Shown: piece after piece, positions 2,889-58,278 of the stretch
Numbering within the stretch: position 1 is the first letter of the stretch
Layout: every line of letters begins with the position of its first letter
Source of the DNA: Tubulanus polymorphus
Taxonomy: Eukaryota; Animalia; Nemertea
DNA: 64,000 nt
NCBI RefSeq assembly: GCF_964204645.1
Contig: NC_134033.1
Location: 2,810,131-2,874,130 of the forward strand
Reading direction: 5' to 3'
Translations under genes and position numbers: made by a program
Notes under the pieces: model-generated
Told to the model about the DNA's origin: nothing
Seen by the model: only the letters and a program-made list of their open reading frames with translations
Database searches by the model: none

Positions 2889-5800
2889 ATGCAGCGAATG
2901 AAAGCGTTGTTCGTAGTTTTACTGATCGCTTGCGGAGACTGTATATTTACGCGGGCTGATCGCGCAAACTCTGTCGAGGAAGCCGCGTCTGTTACAGTCA
3001 GTTCATCTTGTAACAACACTCAATACTCCGTCGATTCTACGTCTGGTTACATCGTTTCACCGAACTATCCGTCGTTAGTGCGCGGCGTCGAATGTCGTTG
3101 GTTCGTCAACAGCTCTTTACCGGGAAGTTTTCTCGTTCAAGTTTACTACGACATCGAGCCGTCGATATTCTGTAACGAAAACTACCTACTCGTCGGTGAG
3201 TCCGACAACAAAATCTGCGCTACCGGAAGAAAACAACTAGATATCCGCAGTAACGATTTGATTTCGTTGTTGTTTAGGAGTAACGTCGATGGAGCGCGAG
3301 GTAGTCGGGTTTATATCATATATCGTTATGAAGAACAGAGTCGCTTGAAGATCTTACATACATGTTCAAAACATGCAGTTAACAAAATACCAACTGAAAC
3401 AGGTTATAAATTCACGATTTCTACCCGGCGATGTAAATTGTTGTTAGAATGGATCGGGATGCAAGACGGGTTTGCAATGAATTTAACGTTTATACAGATA
3501 GATTTCAGATTAGCACCAGGTGAGGATCCAATAAAAACTCGTCCTCAAATTTACGACGGATGGAACGGCACCAGTGAACCTATAGCTCTTATACGAGAAC
3601 AAACCGGACATCCACCTTCATCGTTTTATACTAAAACTGAAAAAGCACGTATTGAATTTATTTCAAAAGGATACCCATATTTTCAGTCGAAGCTACTCGT
3701 GCAAATTTACAAATTATCAGATTGGAACATCTCTAACCCGTTAATTCAAGTCTATTATAAATCAGGACTGCTCACTACAATTGATGGAATACCACATATA
3801 GTAACTCAGTCTAAACACTTATACTGCCGGTCTATCACTGTCGATGTTCTGCAGTACGTCGTCTTCAACTGGACACGTGATCTAGTCTCGTCACCAGGTG
3901 TCGTTGGTGTATATAAACAGGAAGGGTTACGTATTGTGAAAACTGATATTTTACTCAGTTTTAACCATCTTAAATCTCTGAGTGTAAAATCAGACGGATT
4001 TCTCGTCATTCTGTGCGTTTTGACGACATCGGATTTTTTAAGATCGAATATGAAAATAGAATTCGAAGTGAAATCAATGACAATATCAGACGTCTACGTC
4101 AACAAGCCAAGGATATGGGTAAGTTTATAACAATGATTTGTAAATTGGGTTCGTGTAATAGAATCATTGTAATAGGGTATTTGAAATTGTTGTATTGTTC
4201 AACGTGATAAAACAACGCAATAAATCGCGAGAGACGAATGAAATATGAGTCCCACAATCACAGGATCGATAAAGATTTTAAAACATCAAAACTATCTAAA
4301 TCTATTCAAAACCTCGAATTTTCGGTTTTATGCTAAAAACTATTTTCAAGAATGACTAAAAGTATGGCATTTCGCAGTATATATATATATATATATATAT
4401 ATATATATATATATATATATATATATATATATATATATATATATATATATATATATATGTATATATATCAAGCAAGAACGACACACACTATCCCCAGAGA
4501 GGGAACAGGGACAAACATTTTATTATGGGGGGAGGGAGGATTGTAAACGTAAAAATTGATAGTAAACGTTCAATGTTGTAATCAATTCTCTTATATTTCA
4601 GAATGATGCAGGCGTGACACCAATAACAGCTGGTCACTTGTTCCCGAGATCAAAGAATACATTGTATCGTGTAACTACATTACAACTAAACTGGAAAGTG
4701 AACATCTATGAATCACAACAGTTGAAACTATCAGTGCTATCAGAAAACTGTGATCGAGCTGGTTTTTATATATTTGATGGTAGTAATTTCACAGCTAGAC
4801 GCTATGGTCCGTATTGTCCTGGTTCATACTACGGTCGATCTGTCGTCAGCCTGATTACATCAGGTGGACCGGTTACTGTAGTAGCATACGCTTATTACTA
4901 TAACAATCAGTTAACAGTTGGTAGCTCATATCTTAAATTTGCTCCTACTGATTGTGATGGTTATGTTCTACAGGAAGAAGAACGTCAGATCAATATGACG
5001 TCACACTGTCTCGTGATTACACCTGAAAATCGACGCCTTCGCTTGAAAAATATTCACATATTATCAGAACACGAATATCAAATTGACCGATGTTTTCTCA
5101 AGATGTCATTGTCGTGTGATCAGTCTCTGAGTTTGAGTAATCACTTTCTTAATAACAGTCTCGTATTAAACACTGTTGATTTCACAGGTCATGAGTTCGG
5201 TTTCAGGCAGGAACCACTAATTGTTAAACTACGTCGTAATTGTCTAGGAGTGAAAAAAGCGGTTAGTTTTGGATATCTTGGATCCCGTATCCCAGTTACT
5301 ACTAAAGATAAATGTGGACTCGTGCAGTCACCGAACTACCCGGGTTCGGCAGGACGCACATCAAAATCTATTTCCTATAAATTTGAAAACCCGATACAAC
5401 TAAATATATTTCAATATTACAGATTTATTGTCAAATTTATTCGGTCAGTTTCATGTGAAACAAAAAGCAGGTATGAGAATGATCCGATCATTTTGATACA
5501 ATCAATAAATTACGAACCATTTCTTGATGGTAAAAATTTAAAAGCCATTCGAACTCAACATCAAACTAAAACATGTGGAAATAACGCGGTTCGTGGACTT
5601 ATATTTTATAGTTTAACAGATAATACTTTGCGTTATGAAGTAAACAATAGAATTCCGACATTTCAAATACAATACACTTTACACGAGTCGTTACCGATTA
5701 AACATTTCGATGATATCTACTGTAAACAAGGATTTCTGGATTCCGGAATTTCCTGCATCAAATTCATCAGAGATGAACGTCTGAATTGGGAGAACGCTGA

Positions 5801-8800
5801 AATATACTGTAGACAGAAGTACGCGGGACATCTACTCAGTATCAACTCAGAACAGGAAATGATTTCCATCAAAAGATTATTCGCTACAGAACTTCTCCGA
5901 ACGGCGTACACATTAAAGGCGCTTATAATGATGATTGGATTGAAATGGAAGGTAAGACTAATGTATTCAAATATGAATTAGAATAGGATGATTTTTAAAA
6001 TTATGATATATTTCATTTTCTTCACGAAACAGAATGATGGTTATGACACGTGGACTGACGGTAAACCATTGAGCTACACAGAGTGGTATAAACCTGTTAT
6101 TAATGAAACGATACCAGAAGTTATTCGAGGATTGATATCTCCGCTAAGAAAACAACCGATAAATGACGTCAATATGCCGTGTACGGCTATGATACTGAAT
6201 AATCCACGAGGATCAGCGAACTGGGTTCGATTCCCGTGTCAAATCGAGGAGACGCACACGACATTCATTTGTGAATCCGAGAGAATTGACATCAAAAACA
6301 AACACAATTCAACGATAAACGACGCGAACAATTCAACAAATACAGATTTAAATAAAACAATAGATCAAATGATTCCCGATATTACTTTAATCAATTCAAC
6401 CTGTCCAAGGGGTTGGGTAACTATTTCCGGGCAATGTTATCAAATACTAACCGACTGGAAAAACAATCGAGGTTTGAATATTCGGAGTGCTAGAGAAATA
6501 TGTCACAGCATCCGCGCCAAAATAGTAAGAATCTCCTCAAATACAGAAAGCGACTTGAAAAATTTGATCAACGAATTTCAATATCGACATCAATATGGCG
6601 CTATACTGACAATGGACCGCGATGGGTTTAAAGTTATCAAACCATTGGTGACTAGAAATGAAATTACTTATATCCAATCAGTTAACTGGTTATTGAAACC
6701 TTTCGATAGTACAAAAGATAAAGTGCATTCCGTGTTATGTACCTATAATGTAACTGGTGAAGAGTTACCTTCCATTAGCAGTTGTAAATCGTGGCAATTT
6801 GAATGTAACGATCACAGATGTATCAGCGACCATCGCGAATGTGATACCAGACACGACTGTCAACACGGTGAAGATGAACTCGATTGTACGGATATCAATT
6901 TACACAGTCAGTTCCGCTGTAACGATGGACAGGTTATATCGATTAGCGGTTTCTGTGACTTTATGAGAGATTGCGTCGATGGCTCGGATGAGAACTCGTG
7001 CTATCATCCACCGTGTTTATCTACGCAATATCGCTGTTCCAATCACCAATGCATCGATAGTTATAAACGATGTGACGGACTAGCCAACTGTAAAGACGGT
7101 TCCGATGAGATCGGATGCACTGCCGAACTTTGTCAGGGATTCTCGTGCGCGGACGGTGAATGTATTAGTTCTCAGTTGTATCGGGATGGTGTCGTTGATT
7201 GTGGCGGAAGTCTCGAAGAAGACGAATTGGTCACTAATATGACAGTGAATCCCGAGGTTTACTGTAATAATGACAATCACTGTACGACTCGTTTCACAGA
7301 TCTGTGTAAGGAATCGGGTGAACAAAGATGTTCGTTCAATTCTCCTCGCTGTTATTCCCGACACGAAAGGTGTATTTTAGAAAGGATGCCGATTGGTTTC
7401 CCGGTATGTAGAAATCTTGAACATATACTCGCGTGTAATGACTTCGAATGCGCGGCTGGTACTGTAAAATGTCCGGCATCTTACTGTATACCGATCAGAC
7501 ACGTTTGTGACGGTCGATCCGATTGTCCTAATTCAGAAGATGAACGAAACTGCGAGACTTGGTCGTGTCCGGGAATGTTTAAATGTGGCCAGGAAAATCG
7601 ATGTATTCCGCAATCTGAAGTCTGCGACGGAGTCGTAACTTGTAAGCATAACTCGGATGACGAGACATACTGTAAGGTCACGTGTCCTGAACGTTGTAAT
7701 TGCCGGGGTCATTTCATCGATTGTGAAAATGCTCTTTTATCAGATATTACTGGTCGTTTTATAGAATCAACTCGGGTTTTGATTTTGTCGAATAACCGAG
7801 TCGTATTTAACGAGTCGACGTTCAACTCTTTCATTTATCTTCGTTTTCTCGATATTTCGGCCAATAATTTGTCTTACATCGTTCCCAACGCGTTTTCTAA
7901 TCTAAACAATCTATACACATTAGGCCTTACTCACAACCGCATAACATCATTATCTGCTAATACATTCGCAGGTTTGATCGGTTTAAAAGAACTATTTCTT
8001 ATCGGAAATCGGCTGCAACATTTAGAATACGGTAGTCGTCACTAACTGTTCTCGATCTTCACGGACTTTCTATATCGGTTCTCGTTGAAAATGTATTTAA
8101 AGGTTTATCCGCATTACAGTCGTTAAATATCAGCAGTAACAGAATACATCACATTTCGAGATTTGCTTTTTCTGGATTGGTTGGACTTGAAATTCTAGAT
8201 CTCGTCAAAAATGCCGAAGTGATATTTGTAAAAAGAAACGTTCTTGGCGATCTTACATCATTGAAATACCTCGCTTCGGATGCTTACAAATTTTGCTGCA
8301 TGGCACCGAATGTTGACCGATGTCTCCCCGAAGCTGATCAATTTTCGACCTGCTCTGACCTGATGGGTAACGCTGTACTGAGAGCCATCATCTGGATGAT
8401 CGCATCTTTCAGTTTTCTCGCTAACAGTATCGTTATTTTATTTCGCGTTCAAGCTTTGCGGATGGAATCCTCCGGAACACGTAACACATCTTCAGATATC
8501 CTCATCATAAATATTGCCGGTTGTGATTTTCTGATGTCGGTCTATTTGTTTTTGATCGCGGGAGCTGACCACGTGTTCAAAGGCGTATATTATCTGAATT
8601 CTGAAACCTGGACGGATAGCTCATTATGTCGTCTCGCCGGGGTTATTGTCACCGTTTCGTGCGAAGGTTCCTTAACTTTTCTCTTAATTCTAACGCGTCA
8701 GCGATATTCAAATATCGTCAACCCGTTTTCTAGAAGTCCGATTATAACTCCGAAACACGTTATCGGTATTTGCTGCACGTGTTGGCTCGTTATAATCACA

Positions 8801-57900: not shown

Positions 57901-58278
57901 TATTCATTCGCTATTTTTGCCTTGTTTAATGCGGCCATATTGGCTACGATAATGACGACGTACGCTCAGATGTATAGACTCGTATCTGGAAGTAGGTCGG
58001 GCTCGGGTAGAGCCGATCCTACCGAACTGGTTTTAGCTCGAAGGAGTTTAGTAATCAATCTTTGTAATCTATTTTGCTGGCTACCGATAATAATCGTTCA
58101 GTTTTGCGCCGTATTTTCGGTCGAGATACCGAACCAGGTGGCCGCTTGGCTGGCCGTTCTATTTTTACCGATCAACTCGTCTCTGAATCCGCTTCTTTAT
58201 ACAATACTTACAATCGATATGAAATCTATTCGTGAACGCAATAAACGACGACTAGGATTGACGACATCCAGTAAATAA
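51923..58278 (+). CDS. GRL101: GRL101-like CUB-CTL-LDLa-LRR-7TM receptor, copy 4 (~1,947 aa)
   Basis: Exons 51923-53149, 53573-54919 and 55009-58278. Intron 2 is 89 nt, so splicing is required to join the frames, which supports the intron model for all copies. Confidence 0.9.

What the first reader, a model, noticed from the sequence alone, without database searches (positions are those of the whole stretch)
2889..58278. Tandem array of giant CUB-lectin-LDLa-LRR GPCRs with hypervariable ectodomain patches on an invariant 7TM: candidate diversified recognition system
Seen: across copies 1/2/3/4 the 7TM, the LDLa block and the first CUB are nearly identical, while short patches differ radically. 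Examples: FISKGYPYFQ / IISNRNPLFK / IERS---WK / FISSTQS-FK; YPGSAGRT / YPGWAGST / YPGEARRT / YPGRAIRT; CETKSRYEND / CETNSRVEND / CETDRSGRND / CETNNEGKND; NYEPFLDGKNLKA / NYDLFLNGKLIKI / NYQPYLNGKISKI / MYYLFQNGKLFKI. Known: GRL101 (LDLa-LRR-7TM) receptors are orphan and expanded in several invertebrate lineages, and CUB and CTL domains are typical of recognition proteins. Inference: the patches are surface loops under diversifying selection, forming a repertoire of variable sensors (immune, allorecognition, gamete or chemosensory) coupled to one conserved signalling module.
Basis: partly seen in the sequence, partly recalled or inferred. Interest (0 to 1): 0.85.

Follow-up and report, generated by a model that had tools for sequence, protein, structure and literature searches.

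The report
Tandem GRL101-like receptor genes, patchy divergence
The window holds four head-to-tail copies of a giant cell-surface receptor gene from a family of several hundred in this genome; the short very variable patches are real, but they mostly look like old, weakly constrained segments left behind by copy-to-copy recombination, not clear targets of selection for diversity.

Summary
Four three-exon genes of about 1,940 codons lie at 2889-58278 on the + strand. Copy 1 carries a 13-bp frameshift deletion. The quoted patches sit where stated, and amino-acid differences cluster beyond chance (p<=0.0002). "Invariant" overstates it: 7TM, LDLa and first CUB are 95-96% identical, the variable modules 78-85%.

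I added 20 further copies from the same contig. The family has at least 94-114 scored members, with 377-540 candidates.

In the patches, synonymous divergence rises together with non-synonymous divergence. Pooled pN/pS is 1.01 (0.78-1.30), against about 0.5 in the rest of exons 1-2 and 0.33 in exon 3. One 5-codon patch after the YPG motif does not: pN/pS is 5.5, with 42 non-synonymous against 4 synonymous changes, which is borderline after multiple testing.

Candidate selected sites in exon 2 do not exceed a fast-neutral-plus-recombination null. Exon 1 shows a modest excess. Every 230-470-nt segment rejects every other segment's tree.

Best reading: a concerted, birth-and-death family of GRL101-type (LGR type C2) sensor receptors. 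Expression and structure could not be tested. Similar expansions are published for snails, and this scan has already reported the family on other windows.

The parts
1..751 (+). 3' end (7TM and C-tail) of the preceding family copy, which starts upstream of the window
   Evidence: 96% identical over 751 nt to the c3 gene 45826-46576. The full copy was fetched as L036 and is intact.
2889..9289 (+). Copy 1 (exons 2889-4118, 4602-5951, 6033-9289). Broken as assembled by a 13-bp deletion after 8036, with a premature stop at 8043-8045.
   Evidence: ORFs, alignment to the other copies, GT/AG splice sites.
15710..21938 (+). Copy 2 (exons 15710-16939, 17256-18599, 18684-21938). Intact, with the alternative short C-terminus and a different 3' flank.
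   Evidence: The last 60 alignment columns are only 60% identical to the other three copies.
40357..46576 (+). Copy 3 (exons 40357-41568, 41882-43225, 43307-46576). Intact. Intron 2 (43226-43306) happens to be open in frame.
   Evidence: Pfam on the ORF from 41753: Ldl_recept_a E 4e-33 (6 stretches), LRR_8 E 3.5e-29, 7tm_1 E 1.5e-22.
51923..58278 (+). Copy 4 (exons 51923-53149, 53573-54919, 55009-58278). Intact.
   Evidence: The CUB hit in exon 1 scores 25 bits against a cut-off of 21.4.
44057..44899 (+). LDLa block of copy 3 (six cysteine-rich modules). The same block in copy 4 is 55759-56601.
   Evidence: Pfam Ldl_recept_a with 6 stretches. Six six-cysteine modules were found by pattern in copy 4. 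pN 0.022, pS 0.076.
44951..45637 (+). Leucine-rich repeat region of copy 3 (56653-57339 in copy 4).
   Evidence: Pfam LRR_8, LRR_5 and LRR_4. pN/pS 0.31.
45767..46498 (+). Rhodopsin-type 7TM domain of copy 3 (57469-58200 in copy 4).
   Evidence: Pfam 7tm_1 at residues 1339-1582 of the ORF from 41753. RQRY is kept in 21 of 21 copies (with the preceding T in 20), CWLP in 21 of 21 and NPLLY in 21 of 21. pN/pS 0.21, 96% protein identity.
3657..3686 (+). Patch P1, at the end of the second (CUB-like) module of exon 1. Other copies: c2 16478-16507, c3 41119-41136, c4 52691-52717. Indel-rich.
   Evidence: 15 distinct variants in 22 copies. pN 0.385, pS 0.473, ratio 0.81. Count-based ratio 1.34, not significant.
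4602..4637 (+). Patch P0, the first 12 codons of exon 2 (linker after intron 1). Other copies: c2 17256-17291, c3 41882-41914, c4 53573-53608.
   Evidence: 19 distinct variants in 20 copies. pN/pS 1.43 (1.11-2.20). The true acceptor site is unverified without RNA.
5346..5360 (+). Patch P2, five codons right after the conserved PNYPG motif. Other copies: c2 17994-18008, c3 42620-42634, c4 54314-54328. This is the only patch with a clear excess of amino-acid change.
   Evidence: pN 0.296, pS 0.053, ratio 5.5. 42 non-synonymous against 4 synonymous changes, the top of 728 five-codon windows, p 0.0002-0.0005. The first codon takes six amino acids while the flanking codons are invariant even at silent sites.
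5460..5555 (+). Patches P3 (5460-5474) and P4 (5505-5555) in the last pre-lectin module of exon 2. Other copies: c2 18108-18203, c3 42734-42829, c4 54428-54523.
   Evidence: P3 pN/pS 0.92 and P4 0.57, with pS 0.44-0.48. 14 and 20 distinct variants in 20 copies. The c1 version is unique in the genome; the next best match is 85%.
48687..49253 (+). Solitary 3' fragment of a family member (TM4 to C-terminus) in the c3-c4 spacer.
   Evidence: 95% identical over 567 nt to c3 45962-46528. ORF 48663-49286.

Best explanation
What it is. These are four members, one of them broken, of a family of several hundred tandem paralogues. Each encodes a receptor of about 1,940 residues. The order of parts is: signal peptide, a CUB domain, about five further beta-rich modules (two of them CUB-like by language-model features only), a C-type-lectin-like domain split by intron 2, a second lectin-like stretch, six LDLa modules, leucine-rich repeats, and a rhodopsin-type 7TM of the GRL101 / LGR type C2 kind.

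How the pattern arose. The 'variable patches on a constant scaffold' pattern is mainly a product of how the family evolves. Frequent recombination and gene conversion between paralogues, together with purifying selection, keep most of the coding sequence 95-99% alike. A few short, indel-rich, weakly constrained segments are not homogenised. They keep deep divergence at silent and replacement sites alike, with pN/pS about 1. One five-codon patch (P2) and scattered exon-1 sites may also be under positive selection.

Function (inferred, not shown). The proteins act as a repertoire of surface sensors. Binding at the outer modules would be passed through the LDLa and LRR part to the conserved 7TM and a G protein, as in relaxin-family receptors. 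By analogy with snail GRL101 expansions the sensing is chemosensory or immune.
For: Family and integrity.
- Pfam and the best named relatives place it as GRL101-like: Haliotis 37%, Aplysia GRL101, sea urchin GRL101.
- 17 of 24 full copies are intact with conserved GT/AG sites.
- RQRY, CWLP and NPLLY are kept in 21 of 21 copies (RQRY with its preceding T in 20). pN/pS is 0.21 in the 7TM and 0.29 in the LDLa block.
- Genome-wide there are 114 scored matches of 540 candidates for the 7TM, and 94 of 377 for exon 2.

Recombination.
- Nearest-neighbour relations switch along the gene.
- All 42 cross-tests of segment data against other segments' trees are rejected (AU p<0.01, delta lnL 38-287).
- Segment tree length varies 11-fold, from 0.155 to 1.69.

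Deep, near-neutral patches.
- pN and pS co-vary along the gene (rho 0.66, p 2e-9).
- Pooled patch pN/pS is 1.01 with pS 0.33, against 0.48-0.56 with pS 0.07-0.13 elsewhere in exons 1-2.
- The same holds in the closest gene pairs.
- Patch pS matches the deepest non-coding divergence: between-type intron 1 is 0.3-0.5 and the 3' flank about 0.5.
- GC3 is higher in low-pS windows (0.40 against 0.31), which is compatible with GC-biased conversion.
- Exon-2 candidate sites (10) lie inside the null range of 7-13.

Precedents for a sensor role.
- Apple snails have 29-132 tandem GRL101 genes expressed in tentacles (PMC6573481).
- Biomphalaria sudanica has a cluster of 12 lectin-LDL-LRR GPCR genes in a schistosome-resistance region (PMC12297450).
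Against: - P2 has a real excess of replacement changes (ratio 4.5-5.5).
- Exon 1 has 11 candidate sites against 1-5 in eight null replicates. Some positive selection is therefore likely.
- Elevated silent divergence next to selected sites is also what long-maintained, selected variants would show, so pN/pS near 1 over a whole patch does not exclude selection on a few residues within it.
- Low pS in the conserved blocks could partly reflect selection on silent sites; exons have an unusual CpG observed/expected ratio of 1.5.
- Only 24 of several hundred copies were analysed.
- My site test is a home-made FUBAR-like grid method, not a published package.
- No expression, ligand or structure evidence exists for any function.
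Confidence: 0.6

Rival explanations
1. The patches are ligand-contact loops under diversifying selection, and the family is a diversified recognition repertoire (immune, allorecognition, gamete or chemosensory) in which selection actively maintains the differences between copies.
For: - P2: pN/pS 5.5 in the copies outside the window, 42 non-synonymous against 4 synonymous changes, the top window of 728.
- The exon-2 start has pN/pS 1.43, with a confidence interval above 1.
- Exon 1 has an excess of candidate sites (11 against 1-5).
- Almost every copy has its own variant of P0, P2 and P4 (16-20 distinct in 20 copies).
- The c1 P3-P4 segment is unique in the genome.
- A Biomphalaria cluster of similar receptors lies in a parasite-resistance region.
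Against: - P1, P3 and P4 have pN/pS of 0.57-0.92 with pS 0.44-0.48.
- Pooled patches give 1.01.
- Exon-2 site calls are matched by a neutral null.
- P2 is borderline after correction for about 146 independent windows.
- No structure shows that the patches are exposed or on one face.
Confidence: 0.25
2. The patches are local mutational hot spots. Slippage and indel-prone or error-prone repair, or templated micro-conversion from remote family members, would raise silent and replacement change alike without any role for selection or age.
For: - Silent and replacement divergence are both raised 3-7 fold in the patches.
- P1 and the exon-2 124-131 patch are indel-rich.
- Patch pS exceeds the mean intron divergence.
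- Even the closest gene pairs differ in the patches.
Against: - Several patch variants are shared unchanged by non-adjacent copies. One P1 variant occurs in three copies and one P3 variant in four. That fits old discrete variants better than continuous hypermutation.
- There is no CpG depletion that would drive hot spots (CpG observed/expected 1.0-1.5).
- No donor sequence for the c1 P3-P4 segment exists in the genome (best match 85%), which argues against templated conversion.
Confidence: 0.07
3. The array is a recently amplified segmental duplication with little or no function. The copies would be decaying, and the pattern would only reflect uneven decay.
For: - 7 of 24 copies are disrupted, including copy 1.
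- Solitary fragments exist, for example 48687-49253.
- No RNA evidence was found.
- pN/pS is 0.5-0.7 in the outer modules.
Against: - 17 of 24 copies keep an open frame of about 1,940 codons across three exons with intact splice sites.
- pN/pS is 0.13-0.31 in the lectin C-half, LDLa, LRR and 7TM parts.
- 189 exon-3 codons are under clear purifying selection.
- The signalling motifs are invariant.
- The family persists in several diverged clusters on six or more contigs.
Confidence: 0.06

Closest known systems
GRL101 of Lymnaea stagnalis and the LGR type C2 clade (orphan LDLa-LRR-7TM receptors)
   Same: The order LDLa modules, LRR, rhodopsin-type 7TM is the same. The best named database relatives are annotated GRL101 or GRL101-like: Haliotis, Aplysia, Strongylocentrotus, mites. 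The class is orphan (PMC11863921).
   Different: Identity to named relatives is only 28-37%. About 1,100 extra N-terminal residues are present. The 380 residues that carry most patches have no detectable relative among 1.84 billion representative proteins. Placement in the C2 clade was not tested by a tree.
GRL101 expansion in apple snails (Ampullariidae), PMC6573481
   Same: Lineage-specific burst of tandem GRL101-type genes, read there as environmental sensors.
   Different: 29-132 genes per snail genome, against at least 94-114 scored and 377-540 candidate matches here. Snail expression in tentacles is shown; nothing is known here. Patchy divergence and concerted evolution are not described in the passages I read.
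SudRes2 cluster of lectin-LDL-LRR GPCR genes in Biomphalaria sudanica, PMC12297450
   Same: GRL101-like receptors with an added N-terminal C-type-lectin-like domain, in a dense tandem cluster, structurally variable between haplotypes, proposed as candidate recognition receptors.
   Different: 12 genes in 440 kb against one gene per 11-13 kb over megabases here. The passages I read do not list CUB-type modules among its domains. The link to immunity there is a genetic association, not a shown function.
Relaxin family receptors RXFP1/RXFP2 (LGR type C1)
   Same: LDLa plus LRR plus 7TM. From general knowledge, ligand binding at the LRR is passed to the 7TM with the LDLa module needed for activation. 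This gives the most likely signalling logic.
   Different: One LDLa module there against six here. Those receptors have peptide-hormone ligands, exist as single-copy genes, and carry no CUB or lectin modules. The acidic residue of the E/DRY motif is Q here (RQRY in 21 of 21 copies).
Haliotis cracherodii 'GRL101-like' protein P0004 (1,760 aa, with Pfam CUB)
   Same: CUB + LDLa + LRR + 7TM in one chain, so the CUB-extended layout already exists in molluscs.
   Different: 37% identity over 59% of exon 3. Its N-terminal part was not compared in detail.

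Membership tests
GRL101-type / LGR type C2 GPCR | Rhodopsin-family 7TM domain at the C-terminus | tested here: met
   Pfam 7tm_1 E 1.5e-22, 80.7 bits against a cut-off of 30.5. CWLP and NPLLY are present in 21 of 21 copies.
GRL101-type / LGR type C2 GPCR | Leucine-rich repeat ectodomain directly before the 7TM | tested here: met
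   Pfam LRR_8 E 3.5e-29, LRR_5 and LRR_4, all above their cut-offs.
GRL101-type / LGR type C2 GPCR | LDL-receptor class A modules N-terminal of the LRR | tested here: met
   Pfam Ldl_recept_a E 4.1e-33 with 6 stretches. Six six-cysteine modules in copy 4.
GRL101-type / LGR type C2 GPCR | Groups with GRL101 and not with relaxin (C1), glycoprotein-hormone (A) or bursicon (B) receptors in a phylogeny | not tested
   The only support is that the best named hits are GRL101 or GRL101-like. No tree with type A, B and C1 receptors was built.
CUB domain (for the modules that carry the patches) | Match to the CUB profile above the curated threshold | tested here: inconclusive
   Module 1 passes in copy 4 (25 bits against 21.4) but not in copy 3 (17 bits). 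The P1 module matches in 1 of 20 copies at E 0.16. The P2-P4 module matches in 0 of 19 copies. Language-model features give CUB clusters at 0.95 (P1 module) and 0.87 (P2-P4 module), which are leads only. hhalign between the modules found nothing.
C-type lectin-like domain | Match to the Lectin_C profile or to solved lectin-like domains | tested here: inconclusive
   Pfam Lectin_C scores 14.4 bits against a cut-off of 22.6 on the exon-2 half. A profile of 19 copies hits snake-venom C-type lectin-like chains with a best E of 0.003. The domain is split by intron 2 and the halves were searched apart, as the rules required.
Diversified recognition-receptor family under diversifying selection | dN/dS above 1 in the variable patches, not explained by raised silent divergence | tested here: not met
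   Pooled patches 1.01 (0.78-1.30). P1 0.81, P3 0.92 and P4 0.57, with pS 0.44-0.48. Only P2 (5.5) and the exon-2 start (1.43) are above 1. Exon-2 site calls fall within the null.
Diversified recognition-receptor family under diversifying selection | Variable residues exposed and clustered on one face of the fold | tested here: inconclusive
   AlphaFold2 with 19-22 paralogues gave a mean pLDDT of 33.6 and 29.5, so the models are unusable. No outside homologues exist to deepen the alignment.
Diversified recognition-receptor family under diversifying selection | Copies are expressed | not testable with these tools
   The three runs that hold the locus cover the introns as well and look like DNA. 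The one possible RNA run holds none of it.

The most novel reading that the evidence does not exclude
A few short loops, above all the five codons after the PNYPG motif and the linker at the start of exon 2, are true specificity determinants kept different by selection. Gene conversion homogenises everything else. Several hundred germline-encoded GPCRs would then form a combinatorial recognition repertoire (non-self or chemical) built on one signalling module. That would be a GPCR-based counterpart of variable immune-type receptor families.
Probability: 0.2. Interest if true: 0.75.

Novelty: new member of a known kind. Interest (0 to 1): 0.4.

Why it matters
GRL101-type receptors are orphan. 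Their lineage-specific bursts in snails have been linked to chemosensation and, by association, to parasite resistance. A family of several hundred near-identical copies with a handful of variable segments is a convenient natural experiment: swapping single patches between copies in a cell assay could show what these receptors detect. The analysis also gives a caution for similar findings in this genome. In a recombining tandem family, 'hypervariable patches on a constant scaffold' arise without diversifying selection, and silent-site divergence has to be checked patch by patch.

Tried and rejected
- Expression. The one run search and the one read-laying run gave only fragmented, intron-covering contigs from three DNA-like runs, and nothing from the single possible RNA run. 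A 72-nt joint at 43229/43302 does not match intron 2 (43226-43306) and has no GT..AG ends, so it is not splicing evidence.\n- Structure. AlphaFold2 on exon 1 and exon 2 with paralogue alignments failed (pLDDT about 30). I did not run fold searches on such models.\n- Outside homologues of exon 2. There are none except for the 40-residue lectin start.\n- PDB profile searches. Only weak lectin hits appeared, and nothing for exon 1.\n- Internal repeat detection by hhalign gave nothing significant.\n- Pfam on the single modules gave no significant CUB match for the patch modules: none for the exon-2 module, and one sub-threshold hit (E 0.16, 1 of 20 copies) for the exon-1 module.\n- More copies. 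CpG observed/expected is 1.0-1.5.\n- P0 as a mere extension of the intron-1 dimorphism is rejected. The last 30 intron bases are conserved in nearly all copies, and divergence starts at the first exon-2 codon.\n- Cassette donors for the c1 P3-P4 segment: none found in the genome.\n- Organism identity. No COX1 is present in the assembly. 'Ribbon worm' comes from earlier scan notes only.\n- Joined model. Exons were searched apart, by reference. The joined reading frame was only checked for stops inside a script.

Full report
WHAT IS THERE

The window carries four head-to-tail copies of one gene on the + strand. It also carries the 3' end of a fifth copy (1-751) and a solitary 3' fragment (48687-49253). 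Alignment of the copies shows three exons separated by two phase-0 GT..AG introns. Intron 1 is 300-480 nt and intron 2 is 81-89 nt.

Exon coordinates:
- c1: 2889-4118, 4602-5951, 6033-9289
- c2: 15710-16939, 17256-18599, 18684-21938
- c3: 40357-41568, 41882-43225, 43307-46576
- c4: 51923-53149, 53573-54919, 55009-58278

Copy 1 has a 13-bp deletion after 8036 that shifts the frame in the leucine-rich repeats. The other three copies are open throughout.

Pfam finds six LDLa stretches (E 4e-33), LRRs (E 3.5e-29) and a rhodopsin-type 7TM (E 1.5e-22) in exon 3. A CUB domain at the start of exon 1 passes the threshold in c4 but not in c3. A sub-threshold C-type lectin start lies at the end of exon 2; intron 2 splits that domain.

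Exons were handled apart, by reference.

THE OBSERVATION

All four quoted patch sets are at the stated places. Amino-acid differences among the window copies are clustered far beyond chance: the index of dispersion is 1.25 against a maximum of 0.79 in 5,000 permutations.

The contrast is less absolute than described. The 7TM, the LDLa block and the first CUB are 95-96% identical in protein. The variable modules are 78-85% identical.

Two further patches exist: the first 12 codons of exon 2, and exon-2 alignment codons 124-131.

THE FAMILY

A six-frame search of the window's own assembly (268 Mb, 77 contigs) gave the following.
- For the 7TM: 114 scored matches of 540 candidates.
- For exon 2: 94 scored matches of 377 candidates.
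- The matches fall into clusters on contigs 9, 22, 8, 6, 12, 11 and 10.
- Exon 2 is always about twice as diverged as the 7TM: 78-89% against 91-96% within the contig-9 cluster, and 60-64% against 78-82% for remote clusters.

I fetched 20 more full copies from contig 9. Of the 24 copies, 17 are intact and 7 are disrupted.

Outside this genome, the best named relatives of exon 3 are GRL101 or GRL101-like receptors of molluscs, mites and a sea urchin, at 28-37% identity. The first 380 residues of exon 2 have no relative at all among 1.84 billion representative proteins.

TESTING DIVERSIFYING SELECTION

Window and patch ratios
- In 15-codon windows, the windows with high replacement divergence also have high silent divergence.
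- Over 30-codon windows, pN and pS correlate with rho 0.66, p 2e-9.

| Patch | pN/pS | Note |
|---|---|---|
| P1 | 0.81 | pS 0.44-0.48 |
| P3 | 0.92 | pS 0.44-0.48 |
| P4 | 0.57 | pS 0.44-0.48 |
| Exon-2 start (P0) | 1.43 | interval 1.11-2.20 |
| Exon-2 124-131 patch | 1.12 | |
| P2 | 5.5 | interval 2.1-18.8; pS 0.05 |
| All patches pooled | 1.01 | interval 0.78-1.30 |
| Rest of exons 1-2 | 0.48-0.56 | pS 0.07-0.13 |

- The closest gene pairs show the same picture.

Parsimony counts on segment trees
- P2 has 42 replacement and 4 silent changes.
- It is the most extreme of 728 five-codon windows (p 0.0002-0.0005).
- That is borderline after correction. No other patch is significant.

P2 at codon level
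- The first variable codon takes six amino acids (TCG, TTG, CGG, GAG, ACG, TGG).
- The codons on either side are invariant even at silent positions.

Site-level test
- I used a FUBAR-like grid method with site-specific silent rates and separate trees per segment of 76-156 codons.
- It called 11 sites in exon 1, 10 in exon 2 and 5 in exon 3 at posterior above 0.9.
- I then simulated evolution in which fast sites are neutral and 15-codon blocks follow different trees. These gave 1-5 calls in exon 1 and 5-13 in exon 2.
- Exon 2, which carries most of the patches, is therefore not above the null. Exon 1 shows a modest excess.

WHY THE PATTERN ARISES

- Pairwise identity switches partners along the gene.
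- Each segment of 230-310 nt rejects the trees of all other segments, in all 42 tests (AU p<0.01).
- Segment tree length varies from 0.155 (signal peptide plus first CUB) to 1.69 (the P2-P3 segment).
- Non-coding DNA between the same copies is 7-25% diverged. Intron 1 and the 3' flank each exist in deeply different types.
- Silent divergence by region is 0.045-0.09 in the conserved coding blocks, 0.12-0.25 in the variable modules and 0.33-0.47 in the patches.
- Low-divergence windows have higher GC3 (0.40 against 0.31), as GC-biased conversion would give.

The simplest account is concerted evolution. Conversion and unequal exchange, together with purifying selection, keep most of the gene alike. 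Short indel-rich, weakly constrained segments escape and keep old divergence.

Two observations bear on whether the patches change continuously. Some patch variants are shared unchanged by non-adjacent copies. The c1 P3-P4 segment has no close match anywhere in the genome.

CpG decay is not the cause of the variation. CpG observed/expected is 1.0 in the spacers and 1.5 in the exons.

WHAT COULD NOT BE TESTED

- Expression. Three runs that hold the locus also cover its introns and look like DNA. The only possible RNA run holds none of it.
- Structure. Both AlphaFold models have pLDDT near 30. Exposure of the patches is therefore unknown.
- Fold of the patch-bearing modules. They look CUB-like only by language-model features: 0.95 for the P1 module and 0.87 for the P2-P4 module. 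Pfam, PDB profiles and hhalign do not confirm this.

FUNCTION (INFERENCE)

The signalling motifs RQRY, CWLP and NPLLY are kept in all copies, and the 7TM has pN/pS 0.21. The receptors therefore look competent.

By analogy with relaxin-family receptors (general knowledge), binding in the ectodomain would be relayed through the LDLa and LRR part to the 7TM.

A sensor repertoire is the most likely role, given two precedents. GRL101 genes expanded to 29-132 tandem copies and are expressed in tentacles in apple snails (PMC6573481). A 12-gene lectin-LDL-LRR GPCR cluster lies in a schistosome-resistance region of Biomphalaria sudanica (PMC12297450). GRL101-type receptors (LGR type C2) remain orphan (PMC11863921).

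NOVELTY

The layout and the tendency to expand in tandem are published for molluscs. A CUB-bearing GRL101-like protein exists in Haliotis.

This scan has already reported the same family on several other windows of this genome. One earlier follow-up reached the same reading: old discrete blocks plus recombination. Those notes call the organism a ribbon worm. I could not verify that.

What this report adds is the patch-by-patch test and the null simulations. It also identifies P2 as the one segment worth a functional test.

I rate it a new member of a known kind, of moderate interest because of the family's size.

Noticed in passing
window 26637-27323 (-) and 31169-32113 (-): Two small ORFs in the long c2-c3 spacer give weak rhodopsin-family GPCR matches (7tm_1 at 26-27 bits, below the cut-off of 30.5). 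One also matches the nematode-type Srsx chemoreceptor profile at 26.7 bits, above its cut-off of 24.1. A second, unrelated GPCR gene type may therefore be embedded in the array.
   Followed up: partly
window 12485-13483 (-), with ORF 13682-14143 (-): A reverse-transcriptase ORF (Pfam RVT_1, E 2.9e-28) lies in the c1-c2 spacer. It is a retroelement insertion between two receptor genes.
   Followed up: partly
window 34792-34863 (-): A tRNA gene (Rfam RF00005, 64 bits) is the only Rfam family reaching its gathering score in the window. The hammerhead ribozyme array that another reader noted at 35585-35840 does not reach a gathering score in this scan.
   Followed up: partly
exons of c2-c4 against the spacers: CpG observed/expected is 1.5 in exons 1 and 3, 1.15-1.3 in exon 2 and 1.0 in intergenic DNA. 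GpC is depleted (0.6-0.8) in the exons. This dinucleotide bias is unusual and tracks the degree of homogenisation.
   Followed up: partly
3' ends: c2 21900-21938 against c1, c3 and c4 (e.g. 58240-58278), and the flanks beyond: The family has two alternative C-termini with unrelated 3' flanks. Between the two types the median p-distance is about 0.5. The solitary fragment at 48687-49253 carries the c2 type.
   Followed up: partly
window about 4382-4470 (intron 1 of c1): A long (TA)n microsatellite is present only in the c1 intron. Intron 1 exists in two unalignable forms: c1 and c4 share one, c2 and c3 the other.
   Followed up: no
window 36001-38000: A very AT-rich stretch (GC 0.24) lies in the c2-c3 spacer, next to the noted ribozyme-like repeats.
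   Followed up: no
window 24272-25150 (+) and 28307-29113 (+): Two ORFs of 268-292 codons in the c2-c3 spacer have no Pfam match.
   Followed up: partly
L037:2186-3208 region (G000:C9:2965901-2972971): One otherwise intact family copy has an exon 2 of only 1,023 nt. An in-frame loss removes roughly 110 codons, including the end of the P4 module.
   Followed up: no
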